IMG/VR virus record: IMGVR_UViG_3300032782_000001
Location: 186,001 to 250,000 of that record
DNA: 64,000 nt
Direction: 5' to 3' (one strand)
Notes under the pieces: model-generated
Told to the model about the DNA's origin: nothing
Seen by the model: only the letters and a program-made list of their open reading frames with translations
The model's database searches: none
Translations under genes and position numbers: made by a program
In this document: positions 41,459 through 61,416 of the stretch, piece by piece
How positions within the stretch are numbered: the first letter of the stretch is position 1
How the letters are laid out: each line of letters starts with the position of its first letter

Positions 41459-44400
41459 TCAGCTTGCCGGCCGATAGGTCAAAGTGATGTCCCCCGGAGT
41501 CAAGAATTCAATTTGAGATGTATTGATATCTTGAACTCCCTTATCACCACTCACTACATAGGTTGCAGAAAATGCATGGTTGCCGGGAACGTCTGGTGGA
41601 GTCGCACCAGCGTCGAGTGAGACCACCACCCGATTAGCAGTCCTACGGACTCTCTCAGCGGGAATAGCAGAAGCCACGAATACAACGGGCAAAAGAGTAG
41701 CGTCGTCCGAATACCCTTGAATAACAGCACCGTTCTGACCAATAATCCAAGATTGATTTACAGCATTTCCCACGGATTCCAAAGAATCTGCCATTTTCAT
41801 GATGAGGTCATCTTTGAAAACACCATGATGAATATTATTAGCACCTCCACCGTCAGTGGTATTGAATGGAAGCGCTTGAGTCAGAAGATAAACAGCGTTA
41901 GCGAATGCGTTCAAAGACGGCAGAGCCACAGATTCGGGCAGAATTTCATCTCGAATTCGAACGGCTCCATCTTGGAGGGATAAACGAGAGAACGGCTGGA
42001 CGACAAAATCTACTCCCGTTGTGTCGTCAATAACGGATGTTACGTCTGATTGATGGATGGAACCACCAACACCTTTGGAGTCAGTCAAAATAGTGAACGA
42101 AGTTCGAATGGCGGAGTCAACTGTGGCTTGATTTGCATTTGGAAGCAGCTGGACAGTAGCTTCTACCGATATCGGATTCTCAAGAGCTTGCTTCACTACA
42201 ACATCCGCAGTAACATGCCGCATCGTTTGGATTTTGGCTTGCAGCTGTTGTAGAACATCGTTCACCACATAGGTAACGGAAAAATTTTCATCTTTCTGAT
42301 AATCGACCGATATTGTCGCACCGCTTGCGATGTTGGATAAAGTCGTTCGAATAATCTTGATAGGTGTGGTCTGTGATCCACCAACGACAAGATAATCTGG
42401 ATTGGCATTATCAGGGCCGTTATATTGAATAGTCCTGTCTTTACTATAGACCACCAGAGTAAAGCTATTGATACCAACGGAATCGAGAGGCTCCTGGAAT
42501 TCACCAATCAATACATGTTGTTCGTCATTGACCTGGAGTGAATTCCCGGAAGGAACATTCCCAACTTGATTGATCGTAATGAAGTCCTTAGCAATAGTGC
42601 TCTCTCCTTCAAGGAGAGGATCTTGGATCTTGAAAATGGTGAAGCCTAATACAGAATCAAGCGCTCCTGAAACTTCGCCAGTTACAGATGAAACCCTTAG
42701 GATCGGTTGAATCGATGGAATGAATTTGTTGTTACTACGGAATCTATAATCACCTTCCACGAAGTCATCGAGAAGGGTCTGCGGCTGCGGAATGGATTGG
42801 CTGAGACGAATTGTCCTATAGTCAACGAGAGTAACTCCCGTCAGATCATAAGAAGCGGTGGGAAGATCCGAATGATTTCTCAACCCGAGTCCTTGGCTCG
42901 GGTTGAAGAGCATTTCTACGATCGGATTGGATGGGGTGAGTCTTGAATCTCTGGCTCGAAACGTGAGAGTAGTGACGTCAATAACATCAAACCTTATGTT
43001 TTTTGCAATCTCAAACTGGAAAGCAAATGTTTCCGTAGTGGTCCTCTCAAGAGTCCCTTTCACATAAATATCGACTTTGCCGCCAATGTGCTTTTTGCGG
43101 ACTTCATCATAGTCACGCATCATGAAAGGATCGCCCGATTTAATTACGCGCGTCTCGAGAACACCAGGCACAGAAATAGAATTCTCTTCGTAACCACCTT
43201 CGGTACCAGTATCCAAAGAAGAAAGTGCGTTTTGTGCGCTCTCTGCGAGTTCCAAGTTACTCTGAACGTCTCGACCAAAATCTGCAGCTACTTCATTGAT
43301 AGTATTGAAACCACTCGCGCCAGATACGACTGTATCAATACTCCCAGCGGGGATATTGCCTGCCGAACCCGGGGTATCGGCAAACATTTGGACTTTGATC
43401 TCATATCTACGAGTATCTTGATTGTAGAAACTCTGAGCATTGGCCGCGGTAAGTGTAGCCGCACCTTTAGCTCTATAACGTGGAGCCGTACTGACAGTGG
43501 ACGAAGAAACGATAGCGTTTTGCGCCACAATCAGGTCACGTGTCGGTTTCGTAGTCGTATAGAATGTCTGGTTAACAACCGACGGCCGACTACCAAGGCG
43601 GGGGATTCCGAAATTTTTTGCTAGAGAGTCAAACGCGGAATCAATTAACCCTTGGGTGGCAGCGTCCGTAGACAGGCTCAAAGCCGCCTTCAGTGCTTGT
43701 TTATACTGAGAATTAGATACTGGAATGCTCGTCCCCGTGAGACCAGGGTCGTCGATTTGAAGGAGAGCGGAGAAAGACTTAGCTCGATGGACAAAGTCCA
43801 TCAAAAAATAAGCCTTTTGCATTTCATTAGCAAAAGGTTCAATATGAACTTCCCGAACTGTGGACCCAGGAATCAAAGAAAGAGTTGGCTGAACTGTTGA
43901 AATCTCTCGAATATAATTATTAACGACCGCATCTTGTTGACGGATCTGGATACCGCGAACAGTTGCGTCTAAAGCTAGAGGGTTCCCAGAAATTTCTTGA
44001 GAGAACCTACTCTCTTGGAGAAGACCGGTGGATTTATTGAAGAAGACAGATGTTATGACGTAGAAGAGGGGATCTTCAGACGCAACTGCCGCAAATGTAT
44101 CGGAGTTGAGAGTGTTGTTAACGATCCCATTATTGCGATTATGATTGAAGGTAAAAAAATTGGTCTCTTCCAGAGCGGAAACGGATACGGTTAGTCTGAA
44201 ATTAGGCTGACCAAGAAGTGAATATCGATTATCTGACGTCTGAGTGATGACCTCATTTGTAACTGGGTCAAGAATTTGTGAAACAATCCTGACATCATTT
44301 CCAGAAAAAGGCGTGATTTGAGGTGCGGAATCAGTAAGATCATAACTTACTGATGAGCTCGGAATTTCTTCCACTACGGTGGTCGTTGGAGAGGTGAAAG

Positions 44401-44911
44401 GAATCGTATCTTTGTTGATACGAAGATACCCCGATCCTGTTCCGCCTTCTCCTGTAGAAGCATACACATTATATCCAGTAATGGACGAAGAAGAAGAAAC
44501 ATCAGACCAAGTAATATCAACTGAGCTAGCACGACGTTTAAGAACGATCCCCGTTGGAGGAGTCAACAAGTTTTTCAGGTCGGACTCAGCAACGACCGTA
44601 GCACTGATAGTTGCTGCGGGACTAACAGCGCCTGTGATATCAACTGCCCTGAGTCTAATGACATTCAGACCCTTGTCCAGTTTGAGACCGTCTGGAAAAC
44701 TGGACAAGTTAGGAACCGTGAAATTCGGGAGCGCAAGATCGACCAAAGAAGGATCCGACACAAACCCAGCGTCGTTGACATCAATTTGAACGTCAATGAC
44801 ATTCGGACCCACGGAACCAGTAAAAACCAGCCCGAACAAATTCGTAGTGATGGTTAGGGATGAGGTTGTCCCGGAACCGTCAAAATAATTCAGCTGCGGC
44901 GTGGCCGTCAT
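41459..44911 (-). CDS. Baseplate J-like wedge protein (T4 gp6 analog) with N-terminal Ig/Fn3 extension
   Basis: PGSTVREVHIEP, FDSLAKNFGIPR, A..PGSAGNIPAGSI, FGRDVQSNLEL, GT..GY...SVPGV, GGKVDIYV, IHQSDV...IDDTTGVDFV. Confidence 0.85.
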   Translation of the reverse strand: MTATPQLNYFDGSGTTSSLTITTNLFGLVFTGSVGPNVIDVQIDVNDAGFVSDPSLVDLALPNFTVPNLSSFPDGLKLDKGLNVIRLRAVDITGAVSPAATISATVVAESDLKNLLTPPTGIVLKRRASSVDITWSDVSSSSSITGYNVYASTGEGGTGSGYLRINKDTIPFTSPTTTVVEEIPSSSVSYDLTDSAPQITPFSGNDVRIVSQILDPVTNEVITQTSDNRYSLLGQPNFRLTVSVSALEETNFFTFNHNRNNGIVNNTLNSDTFAAVASEDPLFYVITSVFFNKSTGLLQESRFSQEISGNPLALDATVRGIQIRQQDAVVNNYIREISTVQPTLSLIPGSTVREVHIEPFANEMQKAYFLMDFVHRAKSFSALLQIDDPGLTGTSIPVSNSQYKQALKAALSLSTDAATQGLIDSAFDSLAKNFGIPRLGSRPSVVNQTFYTTTKPTRDLIVAQNAIVSSSTVSTAPRYRAKGAATLTAANAQSFYNQDTRRYEIKVQMFADTPGSAGNIPAGSIDTVVSGASGFNTINEVAADFGRDVQSNLELAESAQNALSSLDTGTEGGYEENSISVPGVLETRVIKSGDPFMMRDYDEVRKKHIGGKVDIYVKGTLERTTTETFAFQFEIAKNIRFDVIDVTTLTFRARDSRLTPSNPIVEMLFNPSQGLGLRNHSDLPTASYDLTGVTLVDYRTIRLSQSIPQPQTLLDDFVEGDYRFRSNNKFIPSIQPILRVSSVTGEVSGALDSVLGFTIFKIQDPLLEGESTIAKDFITINQVGNVPSGNSLQVNDEQHVLIGEFQEPLDSVGINSFTLVVYSKDRTIQYNGPDNANPDYLVVGGSQTTPIKIIRTTLSNIASGATISVDYQKDENFSVTYVVNDVLQQLQAKIQTMRHVTADVVVKQALENPISVEATVQLLPNANQATVDSAIRTSFTILTDSKGVGGSIHQSDVTSVIDDTTGVDFVVQPFSRLSLQDGAVRIRDEILPESVALPSLNAFANAVYLLTQALPFNTTDGGGANNIHHGVFKDDLIMKMADSLESVGNAVNQSWIIGQNGAVIQGYSDDATLLPVVFVASAIPAERVRRTANRVVVSLDAGATPPDVPGNHAFSATYVVSGDKGVQDINTSQIEFLTPGDITLTYRPAS

Positions 44912-49051: not shown

Positions 49052-49345
49052 TTAGCGTTTGCTAATACTATCTCTAACTCCAATAAGATGATCGATTCTA
49101 GATCTTTCCACTTTGATCAAATTCTCCATTCGTTCTTTCACGGTCTGAAGATGAGCTTTGACTCTTCCGAAGTGAATCCTTTGGTTATGCTTCCATGGGA
49201 TTCCCTTCTCTACCCCAGAGCCAGCGCAATCAGAAGCTTCTGCTGATCGTCCAGAAGCTTCTGAAGATTCTCCACTCTCGTATCCGCTGCCTGCTTCAGC
49301 TGCGTCAACGATCCCGTTTTCCGATTGATCCTCTGGTCGATCCAT
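49052..49345 (-). CDS. Small protein overlapping the end of the 1752-aa gene (start uncertain)
   Basis: Fills the 158-nt gap with a plausible helical C-terminus (WKHNQRIHFGRVKAHLQTVKERMENL). The only upstream ATG lies 136 nt inside the previous gene. Confidence 0.45.
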   Translation of the reverse strand: MDRPEDQSENGIVDAAEAGSGYESGESSEASGRSAEASDCAGSGVEKGIPWKHNQRIHFGRVKAHLQTVKERMENLIKVERSRIDHLIGVRDSISKR

Positions 49346-52300
49346 AGGTACCTGGTGTCGTATAGCTTATCGCCATTTTTCAAGATAGACGCGATCTTCT
49401 TCGTAAAAGAAGTCACATCGGAGATGCGTTGTGCAATAAGCGTTTGCCTAGCTACGCTACCGGACGGATCCGGCGCAGCTGCCCAAGCTTCAGTGGCAGA
49501 CAGGAAGGCAAGAGTTTTTTGGAAATACCCCGCCATGAATTGAGGACCTTTAGTACCTAGGAATGAGTATTTTTGGATAATAATATACTGAGTGGGACCC
49601 GAAGACGGGAAAGCGTAAAATGGAGAAGAAGTGGATACGGTAATAGTTGTGGTCGTCTTGCTCTTAATTTCGTAGACTCCTTGGTTTGGACCGGAAGGGA
49701 CATAAAGAACATACTTTGTAGTCACGTCCGAGAAATCAGTTGAATTATCAGTAAGGACAGCACCAGACGCCGTTCCAGTCCCGGATTGACCTACAGGACC
49801 CCAATCTCGAATAATTTGATCCACAATCGGAAGTTCTGCGTTCAGAGTTCCAATAATAGCAAGAGGAACCGGAGGAGCAGCTACATTGTTGACAAGGATC
49901 CCGAGTTCCTTGGTCAGAATGTCAGGGAGAGCTCCATCAATAGTTACTTTTACAAGATTGCTGCCGGTTGTATCTAGAGAAGTAAATGGAATTGTAACCG
50001 TCGCAGTAACTCCCGATACTGCGGAAATAACTTTATCTTGATTAGCATTCGGTCCATTAATGAACCGGACAGTATCTCCGACTGCTACACTGAATGGTAA
50101 ACCGGAAATAGTAGTTGTCGTCGGAGATACCGTAGCAACACCGAAAGTATCAAGTGCGGTTGCTTCAAGTGCCAGGTATCGGGACTCTGATCCATATTTC
50201 ATCTGCGGCCTGGAAAGCCGTCCGTCATCCAATTGTTCAATCCCATCCAAAGCGGGGATACGTGTGGCCTTGGTGTTTTGAGGAATATAGAATACCAAAG
50301 TTTCTACAATTTCATTCCCAACCGGAGGGAACTGGAAAGCAGAACTGGGATCAGCCTGAGTAATGTTGTCGATTCCACCGGAATCACCATCAACAAACAC
50401 GTCTCGTTGATCAAAGTAGAACCTGAATGTGGTGTCGTTAGCGGCCAGAAGAGAATGTTGCAAACTGCCAGAAGTCAAAGTGGTGGGCGTATCAATGGTA
50501 ATGGCAGTACCTGAGATGTTTGTCACATTAGCGATGACGTCAGGGGTCCCATCAGGCGCAAAAATGTGAACAGGCTGCATCAATTCAAATGGAGGAGTCA
50601 AAGTTTTAGTATCACCATTTTTGTCAATATTTAGAACAGTGCCGCCAGCAGAAGTAGAAGAGAAAATGGCGTTAGATAAACCAGACGTCACGACAAATGC
50701 ATATAGGAGATTGGATACTGGTTGTCCGAGAACAGAGAGTGTTCCCATGACAGCTCCATAATCGTCACTCGTTACTTGATCATTCAATGCTGCAGTGGCC
50801 ACAACCAAAGTCCTGAAGAATCTCCCGAATCGGTTGATTCCTCCCATATACCCGTAAAATGGAGCGAGTTCGAAATCAAAAAAGTCAACAAGCTCGAAGA
50901 AATCGAAAAGCTTAATCTGATCGTCAATATCATTAGTGACTTGAGTCAGATCGGCTCTCGGAGGATTGGCAGTATTTCCATCAAAACGGAAACGACCGTC
51001 GGTACCACCAACCACACGACCGTCTAGGTTAGCAAGAAGATCCTCCCATGCATTAGTCAAATCGTTATACCACTTGAGAAGGCGAATAGCGACAAGGTCA
51101 ATATTGGAATAATGTTGTTCTGGAAAGAAAAGACTCGGATTCCCGAAATCTTTTGCTTTCATGGAACTCCTACTTGCGGTATCTGGTCCGGAAGAGCCTC
51201 CGGCTTGAGCACTTTGTTGAAGAAGTGCTTGGACTTCCGGCAGGAATGTGTTGAATGATTCAATTCTATAAAAGAAGCTATCGGGTGCGTACAGAGTATA
51301 TGAAGCTACCAATTGCTGAGTCAAAATTCCATTGGAATCGCTAGGTGCAATAGCATGAGAATAGTTTAGATGGAATACGGACCCAGCAGGCTTCGATACC
51401 CTTGCCACGTAAAGGACCTGTAGAGAATCACCAAACACAGCATCAGTGCTGAGTTTAATGAGACCACCCTCTGCAACGGTGTAATCAACATTGTTTGCGA
51501 GGACCGCCCGATTCGGTCCCATTCGAATAAGAGTAACAGGAAAATCGACGTCTAACGGCTTGTCTGTTTGGAATTTCCCATCCGTTTTCAACACGGGACG
51601 AACAGTTCTAGTAATATTCGGAATAATGTAATTCCTGACGGCAGCAGAAGCCAATGTGATCTTGGTCGTATTGGCTTTAGTGTCTTTCAAAACTGAAAGA
51701 ACATAATACGGGTCTCCGTCAACAGTGATGACTGTCCCAATCCTATACGGCAAGTCCCCGGTAAGGGTTATGGAATTCGTGCCCTTCGTGAAGGAATCAG
51801 AAGGAGCAGTTTCATGAACCCTATAATCTCCATTAATCGGCTCACAAACGAGAATAGGAGAACTTCCAGAATCTGCAATGGCGGCATTTTCAAATACAAC
51901 TTCAGTAGTATCGGTACTGCTGTTGTATGTCACAAGCTTTGCAATTACAACATCTTTATCAGAGAGAAGGAATGCTGACCCCGGGGAAACTGTGGACGTT
52001 TGATCCCCATTGAAAGATGCTTGCGTAGATCCTTTAGTAATAACTGGCGGGTCTTGATCAATAGGAGCAAAAATAAGATTGAACATCCCGTTACCACCGG
52101 GTGCATTTTGAACCCAGTAGTCGAGAACAACTGAATCACCGGCTTTGGAAGGGTTTGTCAGATTGATAGTTCCGGGAGGAACAAAAGTGAAGTCAGTAGA
52201 TTTTTGAGTGAAACCGTTGATGGCCACCTGAATTGGCCTATCCAGGCTTACAATATCTCCATCCGGATTGAAGGTGACTTTCGTTGAACCGGTGGTGACT

Positions 52301-54468
52301 ACGCCATTTTCCTGGCGGATTTTGAAAATAGCTTTTTCGACCTTCGGGATAGGTGTGAAATTAATGTTATCAGTAGAGCTCAAGAAGATATAATGAGCTT
52401 CAAAAGATTGACCGGCCTTTGCCGGATTAGTAAGATTGACTTGACCAACTGATGCCAGAATCGAGTATTCTGACTCATCCATCAGTGTGTAAGGACCAGC
52501 AGGACTGTCAGCCTTATATAAGGTGAATTTCTTCATCTTTGGCTTAAAATCTGTCCAAAATCTGTCTGCTACAATCTCCCTATCTTGCCTTAAATCGACG
52601 GAATCAGGTCCAGCATTAGACAAATTCGGGGAAACAGTAACCTGCCTTGGAGTGTCCACCGTGAGGATCTTGTAGATCCCGGAATTGCCACCAGCCGGGA
52701 AAAGTAAGAACTTCCCAATATGGGAAGGAGTAAACACAGGAGAATCTGAAACGAACGTATCCGGAAGATGGACAGTCCCAACAATCCCGAGAATATTTTT
52801 GGGATCATCTTCACCAATCGGTTCAATGAATTCTAAAAGACCGGTGTCTTCATCGAAATTAAAATCAACACCAGGAATAATTGGATGTCCATTCAGAGAG
52901 ACTTCGAATCCCTGTTTGGTGATGGCGCCTTCAGCTAATTTCACTACTGGTGAATCTTTGGCCAGTACGATGTCTACAGTCTTGCGGAAGCAAAATTTGA
53001 ATTGATGGGAATCAAGATCTAGAAGATATCCGTAACCTTGCTTAGTAGGATCTGTCCCATCTCTTAATTCTCCACTCAAAGTCCCGGTGGAACCGGGACC
53101 TGGAAGAATGAAAAATTGCAGGGTAGAATCAACAATGGGTGTAGTTGGGAGCATAACGAAAGGCCCTGCTCCAATACCATCTACGATTACCTGATCAACT
53201 ACGGAGTAGAGGATGACAAAATCCTTGACTGCCTCCTCTCCAGAACCATTGATACCGGATCTGTAAACCTGGAAAGAAACCCCCCTTTCTACAATTTGAG
53301 CTGCATGAACATATGAAATAGTCCACCCAAGGTAATTACCGATATCGTCTGAAGAAAAATAAACTGCCCCGGTAGATACATCGCCGAAAACAGTTCCGCT
53401 TGAAGGTTCATCATCGGGTGTAGATACAGACGAATCGAACAGACTCATTGGGAAATAGTTGCGTAACTGACCGACGAGTTCAGCAAACACAACATATCGA
53501 CTATTTTCATCAGTCGTAAGTCCAACCAAACCAGGAATGAAGAATTGTGGAGTAGGGAAACTCGTAGTGATGGGACCGACATTGGTCCGATCAAGTTGGA
53601 AGCTATCCATGATTACCCCGTCATAGTAGACGGTAGCTTCCAAGTTGGAGTTAATGTCAAAGTCGGAAAATTTTACTCGACCGGTGTCGAGAGACCAGGT
53701 AAAAGTCCCTGGAGCAGGAGTTCCAAGAGAACCTTCATTAGGAACTTCAATGGCTTGCAACAACGGCCCGTACCCGATCCGAATCCGAGGAGTTTGTCCG
53801 GGAGCCGGTAGAGGGTTCAGGAATAAGAAATAGGATGAAGCAGATGAAAGAGGAAGTTGACCAATAGACCCTTTCCTCTGAGTCCTATCAAAGAAATTCT
53901 GTCTCTGACCGTAAACAGTTTGACCTGAATATGTTGCGAGATCTGAAGCACTGAAATTAAGCGATCCGGTATCTTTAGCTATTTGGAGTTTTCCGGCAGT
54001 CAAAGATGACGGATTAGTGAAGTCAGATTCATGATTCACTACGTGAACGTCAAATGTGACAAGTCGTACGGGGGTTCCAACGTAGAAAGAGAATGGGGCC
54101 GTAGCAATAGTCGGATCAGGAACTGCTGCCACCAGTCGTGGGTTATTTCCGATAATTCCAACATTGTCCGGAGGACCGCCAGGGGACGGCATCCACCTAC
54201 GATTAAATCCATCCCAGTCAAATCGATTTACACCGGGTTCATTTTTCGTCCAACGGAAAATGAGATCAGGATTTCCAATCTCAATTTCTTGTTCACCTGC
54301 TAAAAGACTGTCAGCTAGAATAACATATTCAGCACGACTAGTAGTAGCTTGGAAAGTGTCATTATTTTCAGGGAGAACGTAATTACGTGGAGGAAATGAG
54401 AACAGGTTATTACCTGAACTCACTCGAACACCTTCTAGCAGCATTCCACTAGTGTCAATTAGGGACAT
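49210..54468 (-). CDS. Giant baseplate structural protein (1752 aa)
   Basis: Repeated 'DF..D..TG.L.F' beta-domains and 'GPN.G.Y.I' segments typical of large phage baseplate proteins; position between spike and wedge genes. Confidence 0.6.
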   Translation of the reverse strand: MSLIDTSGMLLEGVRVSSGNNLFSFPPRNYVLPENNDTFQATTSRAEYVILADSLLAGEQEIEIGNPDLIFRWTKNEPGVNRFDWDGFNRRWMPSPGGPPDNVGIIGNNPRLVAAVPDPTIATAPFSFYVGTPVRLVTFDVHVVNHESDFTNPSSLTAGKLQIAKDTGSLNFSASDLATYSGQTVYGQRQNFFDRTQRKGSIGQLPLSSASSYFLFLNPLPAPGQTPRIRIGYGPLLQAIEVPNEGSLGTPAPGTFTWSLDTGRVKFSDFDINSNLEATVYYDGVIMDSFQLDRTNVGPITTSFPTPQFFIPGLVGLTTDENSRYVVFAELVGQLRNYFPMSLFDSSVSTPDDEPSSGTVFGDVSTGAVYFSSDDIGNYLGWTISYVHAAQIVERGVSFQVYRSGINGSGEEAVKDFVILYSVVDQVIVDGIGAGPFVMLPTTPIVDSTLQFFILPGPGSTGTLSGELRDGTDPTKQGYGYLLDLDSHQFKFCFRKTVDIVLAKDSPVVKLAEGAITKQGFEVSLNGHPIIPGVDFNFDEDTGLLEFIEPIGEDDPKNILGIVGTVHLPDTFVSDSPVFTPSHIGKFLLFPAGGNSGIYKILTVDTPRQVTVSPNLSNAGPDSVDLRQDREIVADRFWTDFKPKMKKFTLYKADSPAGPYTLMDESEYSILASVGQVNLTNPAKAGQSFEAHYIFLSSTDNINFTPIPKVEKAIFKIRQENGVVTTGSTKVTFNPDGDIVSLDRPIQVAINGFTQKSTDFTFVPPGTINLTNPSKAGDSVVLDYWVQNAPGGNGMFNLIFAPIDQDPPVITKGSTQASFNGDQTSTVSPGSAFLLSDKDVVIAKLVTYNSSTDTTEVVFENAAIADSGSSPILVCEPINGDYRVHETAPSDSFTKGTNSITLTGDLPYRIGTVITVDGDPYYVLSVLKDTKANTTKITLASAAVRNYIIPNITRTVRPVLKTDGKFQTDKPLDVDFPVTLIRMGPNRAVLANNVDYTVAEGGLIKLSTDAVFGDSLQVLYVARVSKPAGSVFHLNYSHAIAPSDSNGILTQQLVASYTLYAPDSFFYRIESFNTFLPEVQALLQQSAQAGGSSGPDTASRSSMKAKDFGNPSLFFPEQHYSNIDLVAIRLLKWYNDLTNAWEDLLANLDGRVVGGTDGRFRFDGNTANPPRADLTQVTNDIDDQIKLFDFFELVDFFDFELAPFYGYMGGINRFGRFFRTLVVATAALNDQVTSDDYGAVMGTLSVLGQPVSNLLYAFVVTSGLSNAIFSSTSAGGTVLNIDKNGDTKTLTPPFELMQPVHIFAPDGTPDVIANVTNISGTAITIDTPTTLTSGSLQHSLLAANDTTFRFYFDQRDVFVDGDSGGIDNITQADPSSAFQFPPVGNEIVETLVFYIPQNTKATRIPALDGIEQLDDGRLSRPQMKYGSESRYLALEATALDTFGVATVSPTTTTISGLPFSVAVGDTVRFINGPNANQDKVISAVSGVTATVTIPFTSLDTTGSNLVKVTIDGALPDILTKELGILVNNVAAPPVPLAIIGTLNAELPIVDQIIRDWGPVGQSGTGTASGAVLTDNSTDFSDVTTKYVLYVPSGPNQGVYEIKSKTTTTITVSTSSPFYAFPSSGPTQYIIIQKYSFLGTKGPQFMAGYFQKTLAFLSATEAWAAAPDPSGSVARQTLIAQRISDVTSFTKKIASILKNGDKLYDTRYLWIDQRINRKTGSLTQLKQAADTRVENLQKLLDDQQKLLIALALG

Positions 54469-54484
54469 TGATCTGAACCGTACC

Positions 54485-55060
54485 TTAGCTCATGACGCCG
54501 ACGCCAGCACCGGCTCCAGGGAATGGGCTAGGAGCACCAGCTATTACGGTAACCCCTTTTGCGGTCGGCAAAGCAGTGTCTAAGCCAATGGCAACTGCTG
54601 TCGCCATTGTAACGGAAGCGATTCCAAGCAATCCAGCTGCTTTAAATCCTGCAATGAATGCAGGGACAGAAATTCCAGGGTTAGGAATTGCTGTAACAAC
54701 ACCCGCTCCTACTCCTACTAAAGGGTCTACGGTATTGATGATTGCAGTTGCAAAAATTTGAGTAAGACCGAGTGCGACAGCCGTGGCAGCTGGAGCTGAG
54801 AATATTCCAACTAATACGGAAGACGCGAAAGCTGCGACCATTTGGCCTACGGGAGGTGGCATGATGAGTCCAATTCCCGTTCCCTTTCCAACGCCTAACG
54901 TCCCCGTGTCCACCGTAGCGATTACGATGCCAGGAGCATATGTTGCAAGACCTGTGGCAATGCCAAGTGCGACTTGAGCCGTAGATATGCCATGGAAAGA
55001 AGCTCCTGCCATGCTCGCTGCTATAATGGCAGCATTTGCTGGAACAGCTAGAAGAGGCAT
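54485..55060 (-). CDS. Ala/Gly-rich hydrophobic three-repeat protein, candidate spike-tip cap
   Basis: Three ~58-aa repeats (..A.F/M....GI.S...A.(A/G)(V/I)A.GL......TV....G.G.G); directly downstream of the spike gene. Confidence 0.55.
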   Translation of the reverse strand: MPLLAVPANAAIIAASMAGASFHGISTAQVALGIATGLATYAPGIVIATVDTGTLGVGKGTGIGLIMPPPVGQMVAAFASSVLVGIFSAPAATAVALGLTQIFATAIINTVDPLVGVGAGVVTAIPNPGISVPAFIAGFKAAGLLGIASVTMATAVAIGLDTALPTAKGVTVIAGAPSPFPGAGAGVGVMS

Positions 55061-55084: not shown

Positions 55085-57400
55085 CTAACCGACCAATACT
55101 GTGGGAACACCCAATAGAGGAATCCCCACTAAATAATCTAGATGCGGCGCAGGCGGACCAGGTATGCCAGCAATAGCGAACCCAACGCCAGTCGGGCCAA
55201 CTTTGCACAGTGGAGCAATCATACTCGCAATACCAGCCGCCACGACGCTGGCCACAGGACCTCCAACAAAGGAGGCAGTTCCAGCCGCGCACGTCAAAGC
55301 AAGATTTCCAGCACCAACAGTGGCCGCAAGGTTCCCGGCACCAACAGTGATAGCAGTATTTCCTGCCGCAGTAGAAAGAGCATAATTTCCTGCAGCAACA
55401 GTATCAGCCATTGCGCCAGCTACAACTGTACGAGTCATGGCTCCAGCTAAAATCATGTAGACGTCCAGACCAGCCACGACAGTCTTGATGTCACCAAGTG
55501 CGAATGCAGTAATTCTAGGTTGAGCAAAAAGTTCCGTAGTGAGTCCGAGAATTGTCTGATTGACGTTCCCGGCAAATTTCATTTTGCAACCACCAACGCC
55601 AGCATTGAGTGTGATGGTATTGGCTTCTACGGCCCAGGCTCCACCCACGTTTTGAACGGAACTACCTTGGATGAGATCCATGGAAGTCCCAGTCATTGTT
55701 CTTAAATCATCTCCTGTCAAAACAGTTTCCCGACCACCGACACCTGCATATGTAGTCTTAATCTTCCCTGCGAGAGTAAGATCGATAGAAATAGGATCCA
55801 GATCATCGTCAGGGTCTTCCTTCATGAAAGCACCGACTTTGATCTTCATACCACCTTGGAGAGATGCATCCAAGCTCACACGGGATTGATCCATTCCAAG
55901 GATTGTTTTAACGGCGCCAAGAATGTTGGCGTCAATAGACTTACCCGATTCATCAGGCTGAGAACCCGTGCTAGCGGGCACATGTAAAAGAACCCGGCCT
56001 TCTTTCGTGATACCGAAAGCATACTGATTACTATTCATGGGGCTTTGAACCCTGAATAGCCTGCAAAGAGCCTTCGTATCAGCGTCAGACTGGCTAGTTA
56101 CAGTGTCAATCGGGTCAAATTTAGGACCATTGGAAGGAGAAGCTTCGTCAGGACTATCAAAGACCCTCATGGTGAGGATCCGTTTGTAAAGAGCTCGACC
56201 CGGAACGGTGTATGGATCGTTTCCTACTACGGTTCCGTAGACATCTTCAATGAATGATTGTGGGTATCCGATGGGATCAATTTGAATCCCATCTCCATCG
56301 GCCGTAACGGCCATAGTTCCATCGCTAGTGTGTCGAATCTCTCTCCGATCTTCCACATAGCAATCAGAGGCTTCGTCAAAGCTTAGGCCATGTTCTCCCG
56401 TGACAATGTAACTCGCACGTTGTCCATCAGGGTGAACTACGTAAGGATAGAAAGGATCATTAGGATCGTCAGGAAATGATTTGGTTCCATCTTCATTAAT
56501 GAGACCAAAAATGAGAAGTTGATTGTAAGCAGGACTATTGATTGGGACGCCTTTAGCCCCAATCACAGAACGTGAAGCAACAGGATTCCCGTCAGAGTCA
56601 ACAACGGGATTCCCAGAAGAATCGAGTAAATCTTGAGTGTCAAATGGATTTGCGGCTAGGAAATCGTCGAAGGACTGGGTTCCAGTAGGATCGAAGCCAG
56701 AAGTGATTAGATCAGGAAGAAGATTGAAAGCATCTCTTCGAATGAGACCTCGTCGATAATAACCAGCGGCATTACTTATGAACTCATTACTGGTTTGCAT
56801 GACGTATGTTTGGTCTGCGTCACGCAACCGGATTTCATTGCCTGCACGATTCGTGGCATAGAAATCTCTATCTAAAATAATATCGGCTCCAGAGCTAGAA
56901 GAAGCAATGAAGTCCCCGGGATAGCCTTTACGAGCCTTGACTCGAGTGACTTCCAAATTCAGATGAGGGTCATCTGCCAATTCCGGCATGATGGAGAGGA
57001 CAGAAGCAATGTCACCAGGATCTGCCGTAGAGAAGGGAGTATAATCACGAGCTGATAGCGTCCCAACGGTCATTACGGAAATGATGTAAGGGACGTAAGC
57101 TCGTGCCCCCAATTTCTTCCATCCAAGAATAACTCTAGACCCGGGTTCTAGAATGGAACCGGACCAAGAGCGGGGGCCACCGCCACCAGAAGCCGGAAGC
57201 GGTACGTCATGGCGTTCCCCGTTCCCCGTTTCGAGACGAACAGAACAGACCATCTGTTCCGTATCGACGTGAATAACACGACCAGCCCACAGATAAGCCC
57301 GAGCATCAGGTCCGTCCAGGGAATGCGCCCTGGCTCCGCCCATCGCCCGAGGATCTGGCGTCATGGGTACCGGAGGTCGGAAATTATTTTCGTTCGCCAC
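55085..57400 (-). CDS. Baseplate central spike (gp5/VgrG/gpV-like)
   Basis: N-terminal OB-fold pattern GRVIHVD...CSVRL...EPGSRVILGW; C-terminal 9-residue beta-helix repeats (TVVAG, TVAAGN, TVGAGN); follows the hub. Confidence 0.8.
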   Translation of the reverse strand: MANENNFRPPVPMTPDPRAMGGARAHSLDGPDARAYLWAGRVIHVDTEQMVCSVRLETGNGERHDVPLPASGGGGPRSWSGSILEPGSRVILGWKKLGARAYVPYIISVMTVGTLSARDYTPFSTADPGDIASVLSIMPELADDPHLNLEVTRVKARKGYPGDFIASSSSGADIILDRDFYATNRAGNEIRLRDADQTYVMQTSNEFISNAAGYYRRGLIRRDAFNLLPDLITSGFDPTGTQSFDDFLAANPFDTQDLLDSSGNPVVDSDGNPVASRSVIGAKGVPINSPAYNQLLIFGLINEDGTKSFPDDPNDPFYPYVVHPDGQRASYIVTGEHGLSFDEASDCYVEDRREIRHTSDGTMAVTADGDGIQIDPIGYPQSFIEDVYGTVVGNDPYTVPGRALYKRILTMRVFDSPDEASPSNGPKFDPIDTVTSQSDADTKALCRLFRVQSPMNSNQYAFGITKEGRVLLHVPASTGSQPDESGKSIDANILGAVKTILGMDQSRVSLDASLQGGMKIKVGAFMKEDPDDDLDPISIDLTLAGKIKTTYAGVGGRETVLTGDDLRTMTGTSMDLIQGSSVQNVGGAWAVEANTITLNAGVGGCKMKFAGNVNQTILGLTTELFAQPRITAFALGDIKTVVAGLDVYMILAGAMTRTVVAGAMADTVAAGNYALSTAAGNTAITVGAGNLAATVGAGNLALTCAAGTASFVGGPVASVVAAGIASMIAPLCKVGPTGVGFAIAGIPGPPAPHLDYLVGIPLLGVPTVLVG

Positions 57401-57433: not shown

Positions 57434-57841
57434 ATGCTAATTGTCCAAGTCAACACTTTGCGTGACGGATCCCGGATTGAAGGGGCCAGGTGGGAAATCA
57501 AAAGCCTGACAAATGTTAGAGAAGGTCATCACATGCAAGTGAGCCTTCCCACGTCAGACGTCCACGTAATCAGTTACGTGAAGAAGCAGGCCAAACAAGA
57601 ACTCGGATTGGAGAAGGATGAAAATAAAGGGAAAAATGCCCACTCCGTGATTCTCAAATTCGTAGTAAAAGAAATTCGACATTTACTAGACACGACCACT
57701 AGTGATATGGATACAATGGTAACACTAGTACCCGTAGACAGGGTCGTGGAAGGCGTACTTACGTATCTACTTCACCCTGAGAAATGCGATCCTCGGTGGG
57801 TGCAAGTCATGAGAGGCAGCGCAACTGCTAATCCTACTTAG
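57434..57841 (+). CDS. Orphan 135-aa protein inserted on the opposite strand between hub and spike
   Basis: Exactly fills the gap; its stop overlaps the hub stop; -10-like TAACGT lies 8 nt before the ATG. Confidence 0.65.
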   Translation: MLIVQVNTLRDGSRIEGARWEIKSLTNVREGHHMQVSLPTSDVHVISYVKKQAKQELGLEKDENKGKNAHSVILKFVVKEIRHLLDTTTSDMDTMVTLVPVDRVVEGVLTYLLHPEKCDPRWVQVMRGSATANPT

Positions 57842-60800
57842 CCTTGACCAAGCCGAGTGCTATCACTTGAATAACCGGAAGGCGGAAGGCCCTTCGGATT
57901 CAGGACACTTGAAAGACTAGGTCCTGCGGCAGGTGGTTGGAATTGCGTTGCTTGAGATCCAGTGCTAACCCCGACCGGAATGAAAGCACCGGATGCCACT
58001 TGAGATCCAAGGCTGGAAAAAGCAGCACTGGCTTGTTGATTAATACTATCAATTTGCTGATTGAATGCCGTCAGTGCACTTTGGGCTTGTGTTAGATCAG
58101 GGGTGGCATCCGCATGAAGTGCCGCTAATGCATCTGTATCGCCTGAAGCGGCCCTATCAAAGAGACTTTGATATGGATTCCCGAGCATATTACTGAATGG
58201 AGATCCCGGACCACCAGCCGAATCTTCGGTAGTGAAGTCAATAGGTGCGCGACCAGCATTCGTCGCAAATTCTTCTCGTTGAAGGTTTTGCTGGTAATCC
58301 GTGTCGAATTTCTGAGAAAGATACTGATGTAAAATATTGAAGAATCCACTCGGATCTTGAAGTGCCTGGCTTACACCTGTAGCCACAAGAATGTCGGCTT
58401 GGGCGGTGTCAGCAAATGGGACACCAGTATTCGGATCAATATCAGGTACTTGAGCAGTCTTTTGAGTAACTCCAAGGACCTGGGAAATGAAAGACTGAGG
58501 AAGAACCGAAATCCAATTACTATTTCCGAGAGCGCAAGAACACGTGTTGGATTGAGATGAGTCCAGTCCATTTGTTTCAGTGGGACATAGATCTGATAGA
58601 AGTTGAGCCCGACTTGTAGCATCGGCCTCAGCATACACAGCTGTGCTAGAAGTAGTTACAGTCCCGCTACTATTCGATTTACTGACAGTGCTATTGATTG
58701 AAGCCGTGTATGTAGTCTGACTTGTGTAATTGATAGTGCTGGGGTCCACATTCCCATTCGGATAGTTTCCGCCCTTGAATGACGCTCCAGTCACATAATC
58801 ATCTGGTTGCATTTGATTAAATGCAACGTCAAATGATTGTGAATCGGGGCCTAAGGTAGTAGGTGGATTACTCGTCAGAAGACCACCTGTAGGGGCGAAT
58901 TGGATATTGATCTGATTGACAGTCCCGCTCGTGACCGGATCTTGAAGAGTAACTTTCCCACGGTCAATGAAGCATCCACGTCCATATCGATAATGACCGA
59001 TCAATTCAAATCCATATTCATCTGAAACGGGACGAACCATAATATTGATGTCTGGAAGAGTTTGGGTACTGCCAGCACTCTGAGCCTGAGCGAAAGCAAT
59101 GACGGTTCGTTGAGCGCTGACGGCTTGTTGAGCAGTTTGCAATGCAGATTTCGCAGTATCAGCGATAGCCTTTAAACTAGTATCAGTAGGATTGGCTAAA
59201 GAAGCGTTCTGTGCGGCAAGGAATGCTTTTTGTTTTGTGGCTAGGTCACTGACAAGTGGTTTTAGCGCATCGGTTGCACTTTGAACGCTTGTAGTGCTGC
59301 CAGCGGCTGAAGCTCCTGCCGCAGAAGTGCTTGAGCTAATGACAGCAGCAGTAGGACCACCGTCCGTACCGGTTCCCCAAGTTACAGAACCGGCGGGAAC
59401 TACTAAAAACTCTTTGAAATATGCATTTTGATCAAATGCGTAATCATAAAGACCCGCGTTACTAAACCCGGCTTCATATCGATGACACCTCAATCGATCA
59501 ATCAGCTGGGCCCTATTTCCATTCGCAATGGTTTTAAGAATGTCGCTCTGTTGATTCGCAGCTGCAAGAGGATTGAGTCCCTGTTGTGCAGCTTGCGTAG
59601 CCGTCGTACTACCAGCTTTTTGTTGTGCAACAGCCAGAAGGGTGTTATTTACAGACTGTCGGTATACCATGACAGCATTGGGGTATCCGAGAAGCTTGCC
59701 GGTCTTAGGATCACGAATGATAGCGGGTCCGCCAGATTGATCGTTGGAAGCTCCAGTATTATTGACAGTCTCACCGACTCCCGAAGGAAACTCAACCGAG
59801 AAAGTCGGTTGAGTTACCATGATGGGTTTGTTGGTCTTAGGATCCAAAGGTCCAGGAACACTCTTGGATCCGAGGCTGGTGATGCTACCAATATTGGTAG
59901 GAGCAATAAATTTAGATCGTTTAGCAGTCAAAGTTAAAGTAGTAGTAGCTTGTCCTCCAGGCGAGAAATTGTGAGAAATTCCTTGGATGTAGAAGAAAGA
60001 GTCATACTTGGGAAACCAGATGGGGAATCCCATCCGGAGTTCGGGGCGCATTGGAATAGTAACAGTCCCATTCTTGCGTTTGGAATTCACCCTATCAAGA
60101 TAATCAAGGAGATGATAGAAAAGCCTTCGCCCATTGGAAACCCACTCACATTGATAATCGAGACGTCGCCATCCATAACGGCGAAGAAGATGATAATCCA
60201 CAACACCCGTGCGGGGTGTAGTAATGTCATCGTTCAATCCGAGATCGTCGATACCGGCTGCACCGCTAAAAGCATTGCCGCTCCCCGTAATATGAGTATA
60301 AACCTCTGCCTCTGAATCAGTCACAGAGTCATCCATGACTTCAAAGTCTTGGACCCAACTTACGGGCTTGTTGGGAATGACGTTTAGATTATAAAACGGG
60401 GGTTTGAAGATAATATCCCCAGTCGTGTCACAGTAAAATTCAAACCCGGCCTGATCGCGAACTGTCATAGCAATGTTGAGTTTGCTCTGCATTTCGCTCT
60501 GAAGCATATTTACTTCGCCTGCTTTATTCAAATCAGTTTTGAAAGCATGGACTTGACTCGGGTCAATTCGGAACTGGGAAGTCAAAGGATTTAAGGTACT
60601 GGTATTTTTGGCTTCCTGCTCAAAAATGGTTTGCGAGATTTTGACTGGAGATACGGTAGCGGTATCTCCCGTAAATGTATACGCCTGTCCTGAAGATCCA
60701 TAGATAACGAGACTATTCCAAATGTTACCAAATTTGAGTTGCCAATAACCCATAATATCTTTCGCGTAAGAAGCGACAGACTGAGTTTCCGGACCCTTCT

Positions 60801-61416
60801 CTGGAAGATAGGAAGAATTGAATGAACCAGTGGTGAGTGACATATCGCCCATTGCATCTTTTGCTAGTGCAATGATGACAGTATATGGATTAGCACCGGC
60901 AAAAACATGTTGCCAGAGTTGGAATCCATTCTGTGACATGCTGGAATCGAGATAGGCAGGATTCACATTCACATTCGTGACTTCCCACCATCGCAAAATA
61001 TCTTTGCAATTTAGTGTAATACTAGTTACGCCATTCGACCAGTTCTTCGTAACTGAAGAAACCATTCCCCAGAAAATTCGATAATATTGAGGAATTCCGC
61101 CGATGAGGAAATAACCTTTCGCAAAAATTTCAATTTCCATCATCGGAATGATGATGAATTCACCATCAGAATAGAAATCGTTCTTGTCATTGTCCGGGAT
61201 CGACAAGTTAATAGTTGCGCTTCCAGGAGGGGAGTCAACTGTGGCCTCGGTACTGATACCGGTCACATAGGCATTAATGTCGATTTTCCGCTGACATTCA
61301 CCGCACGCAATGACGCTCGTCTCGCCTTGAACGGAGACATAGCAGTCGGGAGCCACGACAACGTATGGCCGGGCATTGGGAGTAAAACTTCCTCGAAAGG
61401 CAGAAGTCCTAGGCAT
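57838..61416 (-). CDS. Baseplate hub (gp27 / late-control D-like) with long C-terminal extension
   Basis: PGSATINL, MMEIEIFAKG, FWGMVSSV, FEFYCDTTGDIIFKPPFYN, RRYGWR, GTVTIPMRPELRMGFPI, FYIQGISHNF...TTTLTL. Confidence 0.82.
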   Translation of the reverse strand: MPRTSAFRGSFTPNARPYVVVAPDCYVSVQGETSVIACGECQRKIDINAYVTGISTEATVDSPPGSATINLSIPDNDKNDFYSDGEFIIIPMMEIEIFAKGYFLIGGIPQYYRIFWGMVSSVTKNWSNGVTSITLNCKDILRWWEVTNVNVNPAYLDSSMSQNGFQLWQHVFAGANPYTVIIALAKDAMGDMSLTTGSFNSSYLPEKGPETQSVASYAKDIMGYWQLKFGNIWNSLVIYGSSGQAYTFTGDTATVSPVKISQTIFEQEAKNTSTLNPLTSQFRIDPSQVHAFKTDLNKAGEVNMLQSEMQSKLNIAMTVRDQAGFEFYCDTTGDIIFKPPFYNLNVIPNKPVSWVQDFEVMDDSVTDSEAEVYTHITGSGNAFSGAAGIDDLGLNDDITTPRTGVVDYHLLRRYGWRRLDYQCEWVSNGRRLFYHLLDYLDRVNSKRKNGTVTIPMRPELRMGFPIWFPKYDSFFYIQGISHNFSPGGQATTTLTLTAKRSKFIAPTNIGSITSLGSKSVPGPLDPKTNKPIMVTQPTFSVEFPSGVGETVNNTGASNDQSGGPAIIRDPKTGKLLGYPNAVMVYRQSVNNTLLAVAQQKAGSTTATQAAQQGLNPLAAANQQSDILKTIANGNRAQLIDRLRCHRYEAGFSNAGLYDYAFDQNAYFKEFLVVPAGSVTWGTGTDGGPTAAVISSSTSAAGASAAGSTTSVQSATDALKPLVSDLATKQKAFLAAQNASLANPTDTSLKAIADTAKSALQTAQQAVSAQRTVIAFAQAQSAGSTQTLPDINIMVRPVSDEYGFELIGHYRYGRGCFIDRGKVTLQDPVTSGTVNQINIQFAPTGGLLTSNPPTTLGPDSQSFDVAFNQMQPDDYVTGASFKGGNYPNGNVDPSTINYTSQTTYTASINSTVSKSNSSGTVTTSSTAVYAEADATSRAQLLSDLCPTETNGLDSSQSNTCSCALGNSNWISVLPQSFISQVLGVTQKTAQVPDIDPNTGVPFADTAQADILVATGVSQALQDPSGFFNILHQYLSQKFDTDYQQNLQREEFATNAGRAPIDFTTEDSAGGPGSPFSNMLGNPYQSLFDRAASGDTDALAALHADATPDLTQAQSALTAFNQQIDSINQQASAAFSSLGSQVASGAFIPVGVSTGSQATQFQPPAAGPSLSSVLNPKGLPPSGYSSDSTRLGQG

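What the first reader, a model, noticed from the sequence alone, without database searches (positions are those of the whole stretch)
54485..55060. Three-repeat hydrophobic protein in the PAAR slot: possible new spike-tip family
Seen: 191 aa, very few charged residues, three aligned repeats (IIAASMAGASFHGISTAQVALGIATGL..TVDTGTLGVGKG / MVAAFASSVLVGIFSAPAATAVALGL..TVDPLVGVGAG / FIAGFKAAGLLGIASVTMATAVAIGL..TVIAG...GAGAG), immediately downstream of the spike. I saw no PAAR gene in the window. Established: PAAR/gp5.4 proteins are pseudo-threefold monomers capping trimeric spikes. Inference: a non-homologous pseudo-trimeric cap with membrane-inserting helices.
Basis: partly seen in the sequence, partly recalled or inferred. 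Interest (0 to 1): 0.62.

Follow-up and report, generated by a model that had tools for sequence, protein, structure and literature searches.

The report
Non-PAAR spike-tip cap of huge phages
A small, almost uncharged protein built of three repeats, encoded right after the tail spike gene of a 436-kb phage, is most likely a new kind of single-copy cap on the tip of the three-chain spike, filling the role that PAAR proteins fill in other phages.

Summary
Window 54485-55060 (minus strand) encodes a 191-aa protein with GRAVY 1.19, 6 charged residues and three real repeats (profile comparison z 11-17 over column shuffles). It belongs to an unnamed family of about 445 clusters, nearly all 185-200 aa, found almost only in uncultivated huge phages.

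AlphaFold2 gives a confident model (pLDDT 95.9) of 3 x (helix-helix-beta hairpin). No match turned up in the PDB or Pfam.

The upstream 771-aa gene is a central spike: an OB fold most like P2 gpV, Mu and pyocin spikes, then 8- and 9-residue beta-helix repeats, with no HxH apex motif. The cap gene follows the spike gene in 65 of 66 loci found from the spike side. No PAAR gene was found in this complete genome or in six related records.

A 3:1 complex prediction passes its controls (0.66 against 0.00). The invariant-glycine loop of each repeat grips the invariant LDYxTG motif of one spike chain.

So the "non-homologous pseudo-trimeric cap" reading is supported. The "membrane-inserting helices" part is not: no family member has a segment hydrophobic enough for a transmembrane helix. 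What is unusual is that the whole distal spike plus cap is nearly uncharged. All of this is computational.

The parts
54485..55060 (-). Cap gene (P0001, 191 aa plus stop): the three-repeat, nearly uncharged protein and proposed monomeric spike tip.
   Evidence: for ORF and composition. for the family (445 clusters at E<=1e-3). for the AF2 model (pLDDT 95.9, pTM 0.89); single copy in the genome.
54863..55060 (-). Repeat 1 (aa 1-66): helix 6-19, loop with invariant G24, helix 25-44, beta hairpin 46-63 carrying D51-x-G53-x-x-G56-x-G58.
54680..54862 (-). Repeat 2 (aa 67-127): helix 71-80, loop with invariant G85, helix 88-104, beta hairpin 107-125 carrying V115-G116-x-G118-x-G120.
54488..54679 (-). 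Repeat 3 (aa 128-191): helix 128-141, loop with G143/G146, helix 147-166, beta hairpin 168-190 carrying G184-x-G186-x-G188.
54971..55000 (-). Cap aa 21-30: predicted contact loop of repeat 1 with one spike chain.
   Evidence: residues 21-27 and 29-30. G24 is invariant in 145 of 145 sequences.
54788..54817 (-). Cap aa 82-91: predicted contact loop of repeat 2 with the second spike chain.
   Evidence: residues 82-88 and 91. G85 is invariant.
54605..54634 (-). Cap aa 143-152: predicted contact loop of repeat 3 with the third spike chain.
   Evidence: residues 143-149 and 151-152. G146 is present in 138 of 145 sequences. Column 148 covaries best with spike residue 756.
55085..57400 (-). Central spike gene (P0002, 771 aa).
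   Evidence: Family of at least 179 proteins on contigs up to about 400 kb. Fold matches to central spikes. Repeats and lack of HxH.
57071..57313 (-). Spike aa ~30-110: five-stranded OB-fold barrel.
   Evidence: for the model; best Z to P2 gpV 7.2, E217 8eon_F 6.6, Mu 9ki1_V 6.4 and R2 pyocin spike 6.3, all aligned on residues ~20-126.
55259..55768 (-). Spike aa 545-714: Gly-periodic repeats, 8-residue period at 545-619 and 9-residue period at 644-707. Read as a triple-stranded beta-helix.
   Evidence: invariant G653, 662, 671, 680, 689, 698. (repeat register). (weak, non-significant alignment to the T4 gp5 beta-helix 4jiw, E 0.78). (pLDDT 89-91 for the trimer).
55121..55141 (-). Spike aa 754-760 (LDYLVGI): predicted docking motif for the cap, one per chain.
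   Evidence: D755 and G759 are invariant in 43 of 43 sequences. The motif is kept as DLDPLTGIP in a distant homologue.
49210..54468 (-). 1752-aa protein (P0003), always the next gene after the cap. Function unknown, presumably a baseplate component.
   Evidence: In 25 of 25 loci a P0003 homologue is the next recognised gene after the cap.
57838..61416 (-). 1192-aa candidate tape measure protein upstream of the spike.
   Evidence: TMP_4, E 0.039, below the cut-off: weak. Position and size are conserved in relatives.
41459..44911 (-). Baseplate wedge protein (gp6/J-like). It fixes the region as the baseplate module of a contractile tail.
   Evidence: Baseplate_J, 1.7e-10. (phrog_6, 2.4e-21).

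Best explanation
The 191-aa protein is the monomeric spike-tip (cap) protein of the contractile tail of a 436-kb phage. It is one chain made of three helix-helix-beta-hairpin repeats arranged with pseudo-threefold symmetry.

One copy docks on the C-terminal, membrane-facing end of the trimeric central spike (the 771-aa upstream gene). The glycine-centred loop between the two helices of each repeat (around G24, G85 and G146) clasps the invariant LDY-x-T-G motif (residues 754-760) of one spike chain. This resolves the mismatch between three chains and one chain, as PAAR does on gp5 and VgrG.

Together with the last ~130 residues of each spike chain it forms a distal end that is almost free of charge. 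This end leads the tube through the host envelope on sheath contraction and probably leaves with the spike afterwards.

Shown by computation: the repeats, the family, the fold model, the gene order, the absence of PAAR and of an apex motif, and the predicted interface. Inferred: presence in the virion, 1:3 stoichiometry, and the role in penetration.
For: 1. Spike identity. The upstream protein has an N-terminal OB fold whose best structural matches are central spikes: P2 gpV Z 7.2, E217 6.6, Mu 6.4, R2 pyocin 6.3 (the same set appears). It then has Gly-periodic 8- and 9-residue repeats. It lies between a TMP-sized gene and the baseplate wedge genes.

2. Need for a separate tip. None of 119 family spikes has HxH in the last 120 aa. 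Spikes without that motif are proposed to carry a separate tip protein (PMC12407873).

3. No PAAR. PF05488, PF13665 and phrog_281 found nothing in the complete genome, although T4 gp5.4 matches PF05488 and phrog_281. PF05488 also found nothing in five related huge-phage records or in LR745208.1.

4. Gene order. The order is spike, then cap, in 25 of 25 loci found through the cap. It holds in 65 of 66 loci found through the spike, down to 25-30% spike identity. Stop and start mostly abut or overlap.

5. Complex prediction (3 x spike 590-771 plus 1 cap). Score 0.66, 0.68 and 0.66; best of 3 controls 0.00. That mark was reached by 58 of 80 solved complexes and 2 of 110 mismatched pairs. The runs agree in at least 95% of contacts and partner pLDDT is 89-90. 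The interface is threefold-equivalent and uses the invariant residues of both proteins.

6. Covariation. Spike residue 756 covaries best, among all 191 cap columns, with cap column 148, which is a predicted contact. Trp pairs with Gly in 20 of 21 cases; Tyr pairs with S, A or M.

7. Distant co-occurrence. A distant phage (LR745208.1) keeps both the cap homologue and the LD-x-L-T-G-I-P motif in its spike, although the two genes are ~245 kb apart.

8. Precedent. The tip gene lies in the locus just after the spike gene in T4 (5 to 5.4). phiKZ pairs spike gp164 with a monomeric tip gp163.1.
Against: - Nothing here is experimental. There is no virion proteomics and no density map.
- The complex job offered only the spike C-terminus, so other binding sites were never in competition. 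The tool's calibration applies only roughly to a 3+1 job run with my own alignments.
- The spike fold matches are middling (Z 6-7, a range in which generic OB folds also score). The beta-helix is inferred from periodicity, from a non-significant gp5 alignment and from the confident trimer in the complex job.
- The covariation is confounded by phylogeny. The strongest inter-protein pairs lie outside the confident interface.
- One locus (L089) has no cap gene within 3 kb downstream. In LR745208.1 the two genes are far apart.
Confidence: 0.68

Rival explanations
1. Assembly chaperone. The protein binds the C-terminal ends of the three spike chains to nucleate or register trimerisation of the beta-helix, as downstream-encoded fibre chaperones do, and is absent from the finished virion.
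For: It binds the spike C-terminus in the prediction. It is encoded directly downstream and is often translationally coupled. Fibre and spike chaperones are typically encoded just downstream of their client, which is established knowledge for Mu/P2 Tfa and T4 gp38.
Against: A rigid pseudo-threefold monomer that contacts three identical motifs symmetrically looks like a permanent structural cap. The spike lacks any other tip (no HxH apex, no PAAR). The sequence is strongly conserved at a fixed length of ~190 aa across 445 clusters. In T2-type phages gp38 also stays on the fibre, so the two roles do not exclude each other.
Confidence: 0.12
2. Membrane-active ejection protein. Whether or not it rides on the spike, its six helices unfold into the host membrane to form or seed a channel or an anchor.
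For: GRAVY is 1.19, 3% of residues are charged, and the family median GRAVY is 0.85. The weak best structural matches are helical membrane transporters (Z up to 4.9). The distal 128 residues of the spike are equally uncharged. That fits a tip meant to sit in or pass through lipid.
Against: No 19-aa window has a negative insertion energy in any of 145 members. The helices have N/Q/S/T faces and three of the six are only 10-14 residues long. Some members have up to 28 charged residues. The model is a confident compact alpha/beta domain. Z 4.9 is below the noise level the tool itself states.
Confidence: 0.08
3. Another baseplate-core component, such as a plug or adaptor associated with the 1752-aa downstream protein or with the tape measure. 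The predicted spike interface would then be a false positive.
For: The downstream 1752-aa gene is as strictly syntenic as the spike. Only one partner hypothesis could be tested. 2 of 110 mismatched pairs reach the mark in the tool's calibration.
Against: The predicted interface coincides with the invariant residues of both proteins and obeys the 3:1 symmetry, which a random false positive would not be expected to do. There is covariation at a predicted contact.
Confidence: 0.1

Closest known systems
PAAR-repeat spike tips (T4 gp5.4, T6SS PAAR, eCIS Afp10/Pvc10; Pfam PF05488)
   Same: Proposed role and logic are the same: one chain with internal threefold pseudo-symmetry caps the blunt C-terminal end of a trimeric beta-helical spike. 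In T4 the tip gene lies in the locus just after the spike gene (PMC12407873).
   Different: - No sequence relation: hhalign probability 0.4% to gp5.4 and no Pfam hit.
- About twice the size (191 against ~97 aa).
- Alpha/beta repeats with six helices instead of an all-beta cone.
- No conserved Cys or His for a metal site; only H112, in 56% of members.
- 3% charged residues against 18.6% in gp5.4.
- Docking is predicted through helix-loop-helix loops onto an LDYxTG motif that follows the beta-helix repeats, not onto the last beta-helix turn.
Fused apex domain of P2 gpV / phi92 gp138 spikes
   Same: It also forms the membrane-attacking end of a central spike. The spike OB fold here is most similar to P2 gpV (Z 7.2).
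   Different: The apex is part of the spike chain and holds an Fe ion through three HxH motifs (PMC12407873). None of 119 spikes of this family has HxH near the C-terminus, and here the tip is a separate gene.
RB43 orf205w / KP15_158-type putative non-PAAR tip (~690 aa)
   Same: It is a precedent for a non-PAAR protein, encoded right after the spike gene, that occupies the tip (gene order in KP15).
   Different: Unrelated in sequence: hhalign probability 0.1%. It is 3.6 times longer and mostly helical, with no three-repeat architecture reported.
phiKZ gp164 spike with monomeric tip gp163.1
   Same: A jumbo-phage example of a trimeric spike whose beta-helix C-terminus carries a monomeric tip (PMC13250141).
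   Different: No homologue of the present family was found among PDB sequences or folds, so the present protein does not appear to be of the gp163.1 type. I did not check whether the phiKZ baseplate entry is in the PDB copy searched, and I did not compare the two proteins directly.

Membership tests
PAAR-repeat proteins (PF05488 / phrog_281) | Sequence match to the PAAR_motif profile | tested here: not met
   P0001 has no Pfam or PHROG hit. None of 25 family members hits PAAR. hhalign of the family profile against T4 gp5.4 gives probability 0.4%. T4 gp5.4 as a positive control hits PF05488 at 9.4e-10 and phrog_281 at 2.9e-37.
PAAR-repeat proteins (PF05488 / phrog_281) | All-beta conical fold of three PAAR lobes | tested here: not met
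   The AF2 model has six helices and three hairpins. No PDB fold match was found, PAAR structures included: Foldseek E >= 0.7 and VIA best Z 4.9.
PAAR-repeat proteins (PF05488 / phrog_281) | Conserved His/Cys metal site near the apex | tested here: not met
   No column has Cys above 10%. The only column with His above 10% is position 112, at 56%.
PAAR-repeat proteins (PF05488 / phrog_281) | One monomer binds the C-terminal end of a trimeric spike (functional feature) | tested here: met
   By prediction only: score 0.66 against a best control of 0.00, with three equivalent contacts.
Central spike proteins (gp5 / gpV / VgrG C-terminal part), for the upstream gene P0002 | N-terminal OB fold | tested here: met
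   Five-stranded barrel at aa 38-109. The best VIA matches are P2 gpV, E217, Mu and R2 pyocin spikes, Z 6.3-7.2. Generic OB folds score nearly as high, so the match is moderate.
Central spike proteins (gp5 / gpV / VgrG C-terminal part), for the upstream gene P0002 | C-terminal triple-stranded beta-helix | tested here: inconclusive
   Invariant Gly every 8 and then every 9 residues. The trimer of residues 590-771 folds with pLDDT 89-91. The profile alignment to the gp5 beta-helix has only E 0.78. Coordinates were not inspectable.
Apex-domain spikes (P2 gpV type) | HxH motif near the C-terminus | tested here: not met
   0 of 119 family members.
Integral membrane / pore-forming helical proteins | At least one segment hydrophobic enough for a transmembrane helix | tested here: not met
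   Simple sum of Hessa-scale values (taken from memory of Hessa et al. 2005) over 19-aa windows: minimum +1.1 in P0001, and above 0 in all 145 members. No dedicated TM predictor was available.

The most novel reading that the evidence does not exclude
The cap and the equally uncharged last ~130 residues of each spike chain may form a lipid-compatible 'greasy' tip that does more than pierce. After contraction it would partition into the host membrane, and the cap's helical hairpins would open to anchor the spike or seed the channel through which the tape measure and the DNA leave. That would be a membrane-active spike tip with a fold seen nowhere else.
Probability: 0.1. Interest if true: 0.85.

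Novelty: new variant of a known kind. Interest (0 to 1): 0.62.

Why it matters
Monomeric spike tips decide whether a contractile tail can breach a given envelope. In T4, gp5.4 is needed for fitness and for infecting deep-rough LPS mutants (PMC12407873). Almost all known tips are PAAR proteins or fused Fe-binding apex domains.

This is a third solution, with a fold that has no match in the PDB. It is used by a very large and entirely uncultivated clade of 200-530-kb phages: about 445 clusters at 50% identity.

Three things follow:
- It gives a name and a testable role to a widespread family of hypothetical proteins.
- It supplies a simple annotation rule for huge-phage baseplates: the spike ends in LDYxTG and is followed by a ~190-aa three-repeat gene.
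- Its almost charge-free tip raises the question of what envelope these phages cross and how.

Tried and rejected
- Similarity to cultured phages. Megablast of the 9-kb region and tblastn of the cap against 50,697 phage records found nothing. tblastn of the spike found only the uncultured LR745208.1. So no cultured relative is available.
- Known families. Pfam and PHROGs on the cap, the spike and the 1752-aa protein gave nothing. PDB sequence searches with profiles gave nothing for the cap and only non-significant gp5 beta-helix rows for the spike.
- Fold searches on the cap model. Foldseek against the PDB gave no hit. The wide VIA search gave a best Z of 4.9 to membrane transporters, below the noise level the tool states, so I rejected it as evidence of kinship. 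BFVD and the Atlas returned only unnamed viral clusters.
- Kinship with the RB43/KP15 non-PAAR tip candidate: rejected.
- P0142, a 295-aa family member with an N-terminal extension, was checked as a possible fusion. The extension looks like an over-extended ORF call and was not pursued.
Occurrence in bacterial genomes, hinted at by an Atlas cluster that is 62% Bacteria and mostly Myxococcota, was therefore not examined.
- DUF4280 (PF14107) search of the genome: silent, but its control was silent too, so it is uninformative.
- Source names for homologues: none exist.
I could not measure the pseudo-symmetry, the surface or which end is distal.

Full report
**What the window is.** The window is bases 186001-250000 of a 436,316-bp virus record with direct terminal repeats, rated 100% complete. 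All long ORFs lie on the minus strand. The region is the baseplate and fibre module of a contractile tail. It contains:
- a gp6/J-like wedge protein at 41459-44911 (Baseplate_J 1.7e-10, phrog_6 2.4e-21);
- a collagen-repeat fibre protein at 37797-40550;
- a TMP-sized 1192-aa gene at 57838-61416 with a weak TMP_4 match;
- GIY-YIG homing endonuclease genes.

No cultured phage is similar at the DNA level.

**The observation.** The ORF at 54485-55060 is on the minus strand and encodes 191 aa (P0001). It has 40 Ala, 28 Gly, 22 Val and only six charged residues, with GRAVY 1.19.

I built a 25-member family alignment and compared the three segments as profiles. The results were P = 7.5e-10, 4.8e-6 and 2.9e-9. 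Column-shuffled controls, which keep composition and conservation, never came near these scores: z = 17.3, 11.3 and 14.1, with 0 of 150 shuffles reaching the observed value. So the repeats are not a by-product of the skewed composition. The most conserved residues also recur in register: G24/G85/G146 and three GxGxG-type motifs at 53-58, 116-120 and 184-188.

**The family.** A word-based search found 24 homologues of 189-194 aa, none named. An exhaustive profile search of 1.84 billion representatives found 445 clusters at E <= 1e-3 and 241 at E <= 1e-10. Nearly all are 185-200 aa. Atlas neighbours are unnamed clusters, mostly labelled Uroviricota. No member matches a Pfam family convincingly. 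The gene is single-copy in this genome.

**The fold.** With a 145-sequence alignment, AlphaFold2 gives pLDDT 95.9 and pTM 0.89. Each repeat is helix, loop, helix, beta hairpin: H6-19, H25-44, E46-54, E58-63; H71-80, H88-104, E107-112, E118-125; H128-141, H147-166, E168-175, E181-190.

Foldseek against the PDB found nothing (best E 0.7). A wide search independent of Foldseek found no chain with Z >= 5. BFVD held one unnamed relative. I therefore found no solved structure with this fold. I could not inspect the coordinates.

**The upstream gene is a central spike.** P0002 (55085-57400, 771 aa) belongs to a large, well-conserved and unnamed family found on contigs of up to ~400 kb.
- Its monomer model is only moderately confident (pLDDT 60), but it has a five-stranded barrel at residues 38-109.
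- Foldseek's list, though not significant, is full of central spikes.
- In the VIA second look the four best chains are P2 gpV (Z 7.2), E217 8eon_F (6.6), Mu 9ki1_V (6.4) and the R2 pyocin spike (6.3). All align to residues ~20-126, just above generic OB folds.
- The C-terminal third has invariant glycines every 8 residues (545-619) and then every 9 residues (644-707). This is the signature of a triple-stranded beta-helix.
- The profile aligns to the T4 gp5 beta-helix fragment, but without significance (E 0.78).
- None of 119 family members has an HxH motif in the last 120 residues.

According to PMC12407873, a spike is an OB fold plus a beta-helix. Spikes with a C-terminal HxH carry a fused Fe-binding apex. 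Spikes without it are proposed to carry a separate monomeric tip, which is usually a PAAR protein.

**No PAAR.** PF05488, PF13665 and phrog_281 found nothing in the six-frame translation of the complete genome. T4 gp5.4, used as a positive control, matches PF05488 and phrog_281. PF05488 is also absent from five related huge-phage records, four of them at least 94% complete, and from LR745208.1. A DUF4280 search was uninformative because its control was silent.

**Gene order.**
- The order spike, cap, ~1750-2000-aa protein was seen in all five contigs looked up by identity. One had a 377-aa gene inserted between spike and cap.
- The same order was seen in 25 of 25 loci with DNA in hand.
- Starting from the spike side, which avoids circularity, 65 of 66 IMG/VR loci with enough downstream DNA carry the cap gene next on the same strand. 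This includes spikes only 25-30% identical to P0002.
- In most loci the stop and start abut or overlap.
- In five loci 0.7-1.2 kb is inserted between the two genes. One insert is a GIY-YIG gene.
- The exception is L089.
- In the distant LR745208.1 the cap homologue (E 2.7e-13) lies ~245 kb from the spike homologue and directly downstream of an HNH endonuclease gene. That spike still ends in DLDPLTGIP.

Co-occurrence therefore outlasts adjacency.

**The complex.** I folded three copies of spike residues 590-771 with one cap, using my own alignments. The scores were 0.66, 0.68 and 0.66, and the best of three controls was 0.00. That mark was reached by 58 of 80 solved complexes and 2 of 110 mismatched pairs. 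The runs agree in at least 95% of their contacts and partner pLDDT is 89-90. The tool warns that its calibration holds only roughly for this kind of job. The model supports binding; it does not show it.

The content of the interface is what makes it persuasive. Each spike copy contributes the same residues, 754-759/760 (LDYLVGI). The cap contributes three equivalent loops: 21-27 and 29-30, 82-88 and 91, 143-149 and 151-152. These are the helix-to-helix loops of the three repeats. They hold the cap's invariant G24 and G85 and the near-invariant G146, and they meet the spike's invariant D755 and G759.

I also tested covariation on 72 non-identical spike-cap pairs. Spike position 756 (Y, W or P) covaries best, of all 191 cap columns, with column 148, which is a predicted contact. 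Trp goes with Gly in 20 of 21 cases, while Tyr goes with Ser, Ala or Met. The equivalent column 26 ranks fourth. The interface block as a whole exceeds random blocks in all but 108 of 5000 draws. This is confounded by shared ancestry. The strongest pairs overall (spike 740/744/748/770 with cap 62/64/126/169) lie outside the confident interface and remain unexplained.

**Is it membrane-inserting?** Probably not in the usual sense.
- On a simple sum of Hessa-scale values (recalled from Hessa et al. 2005), no 19-residue window is below zero in P0001 (minimum +1.1) or in any of 145 members (median +3.2). The 715-aa protein at 46888-49035 does have such a window, at -2.1.
- The helices are amphipathic with an uncharged polar face. 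Positions such as 29, 36, 40 and 43 are mostly Q, N, T or S.
- Three of the six helices are only 10-14 residues long.
- The family ranges from GRAVY 0.32 to 1.33 and from 2 to 28 charged residues.

What is unusual is the lack of charge. The cap has 3.1% charged residues and spike residues 644-771 have 3.9% (GRAVY 1.07). Spike residues 1-500 have 22% and T4 gp5.4 has 18.6%. The whole distal end of the spike complex is therefore nearly charge-free. I read this as an adaptation for crossing or residing in a hydrophobic barrier, but that is inference.

**Comparison with known tips.** The protein works like PAAR: a pseudo-threefold monomer on a trimeric spike, encoded beside it. It is not a member of the family, because sequence, fold and metal site all fail the test. 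It is not the fused apex type. It is not the RB43/KP15 type of putative non-PAAR tip. phiKZ shows that jumbo phages also use a monomeric tip on the spike. I found no paper that describes this family.

**Verdict.** This is a real, widespread and unnamed protein family. It is most likely (about 0.7) a new, non-PAAR class of monomeric spike-tip protein in uncultivated huge phages. The main rivals are a non-virion assembly chaperone (0.12), another baseplate-core role (0.10) and a truly membrane-inserting protein (0.08). All the evidence is computational. Virion proteomics, or a structure of the co-expressed complex, would settle it.

Noticed in passing
window 57434-57841 (+): A 135-aa ORF on the opposite strand sits between the TMP-sized gene and the spike gene. 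Opposite-strand ORFs of 91-133 aa occupy the same place in three related contigs. It has no Pfam hit. It may be a conserved small gene embedded against the direction of the tail operon.
   Followed up: partly
window 46888-49035 (-): This 715-aa protein, the next gene after the 1752-aa protein that follows the cap, is the only protein in the module with a transmembrane-like window (simple Hessa sum -2.1 at residue ~45). Its GRAVY is 0.31 and it has no Pfam or PHROG hit.
   Followed up: no
window 55085-55468 (-), spike aa 644-771: The last 128 residues of the spike are as charge-poor as the cap: 3.9% charged and GRAVY 1.07, against 22% and -0.36 for residues 1-500. The whole distal spike is therefore nearly uncharged.
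   Followed up: partly
window 36912-37769 (-) and 20736-21656 (-): Two GIY-YIG/NUMOD3 homing-endonuclease-type genes lie inside the tail module. In relatives, inserts of 0.7-1.2 kb sit exactly between the spike and cap genes. L041 carries a GIY-YIG gene and L083 a weak D12 methyltransferase match. LR745208.1 has an HNH gene directly upstream of its cap homologue.
   Followed up: partly
window 37797-40550 (-): A 917-aa protein with about nine stretches of collagen triple-helix repeats (PF01391, 5e-70). It coincides with a local GC peak of 0.59 against ~0.47 elsewhere. It is presumably a tail fibre.
   Followed up: no
LR745208.1 226742-227263 (L032:12728-13306, -) and 471581-472816 (L030): In this 485-kb uncultured phage the cap homologue and the spike homologue are ~245 kb apart. 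The gene after the spike looks like a peptidoglycan amidase by eye (not scanned). Synteny is broken, but both genes and the LD-x-L-T-G-I-P spike motif are kept.
   Followed up: partly
L089 (IMGVR_UViG_3300017987_000070): This is the only one of 66 spike loci without a cap gene within ~3 kb downstream. Two unannotated opposite-strand ORFs of 211 and 546 aa lie there instead.
   Followed up: partly
spike aa 740-748 and 770 against cap aa 62, 64, 126, 169: These are the strongest inter-protein covariation pairs, and they lie outside the confident predicted interface. They may be clade markers or a second contact surface on the hairpin side of the cap.
   Followed up: no
window 1847-2422 (-) and 2367-4571 (-): A NADAR-domain protein (2.3e-52) lies next to an SNF2-family helicase. 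A NADAR gene also sits inside the baseplate module of a related contig.
   Followed up: no
Atlas cluster, row 2 of the structure search: A 200-aa cluster with the same predicted shape (TM 0.76) is labelled 62% Bacteria, mostly Myxococcota. The family may also occur in prophages or contractile injection systems of bacteria. The genome-contig scan could not be run.
   Followed up: no
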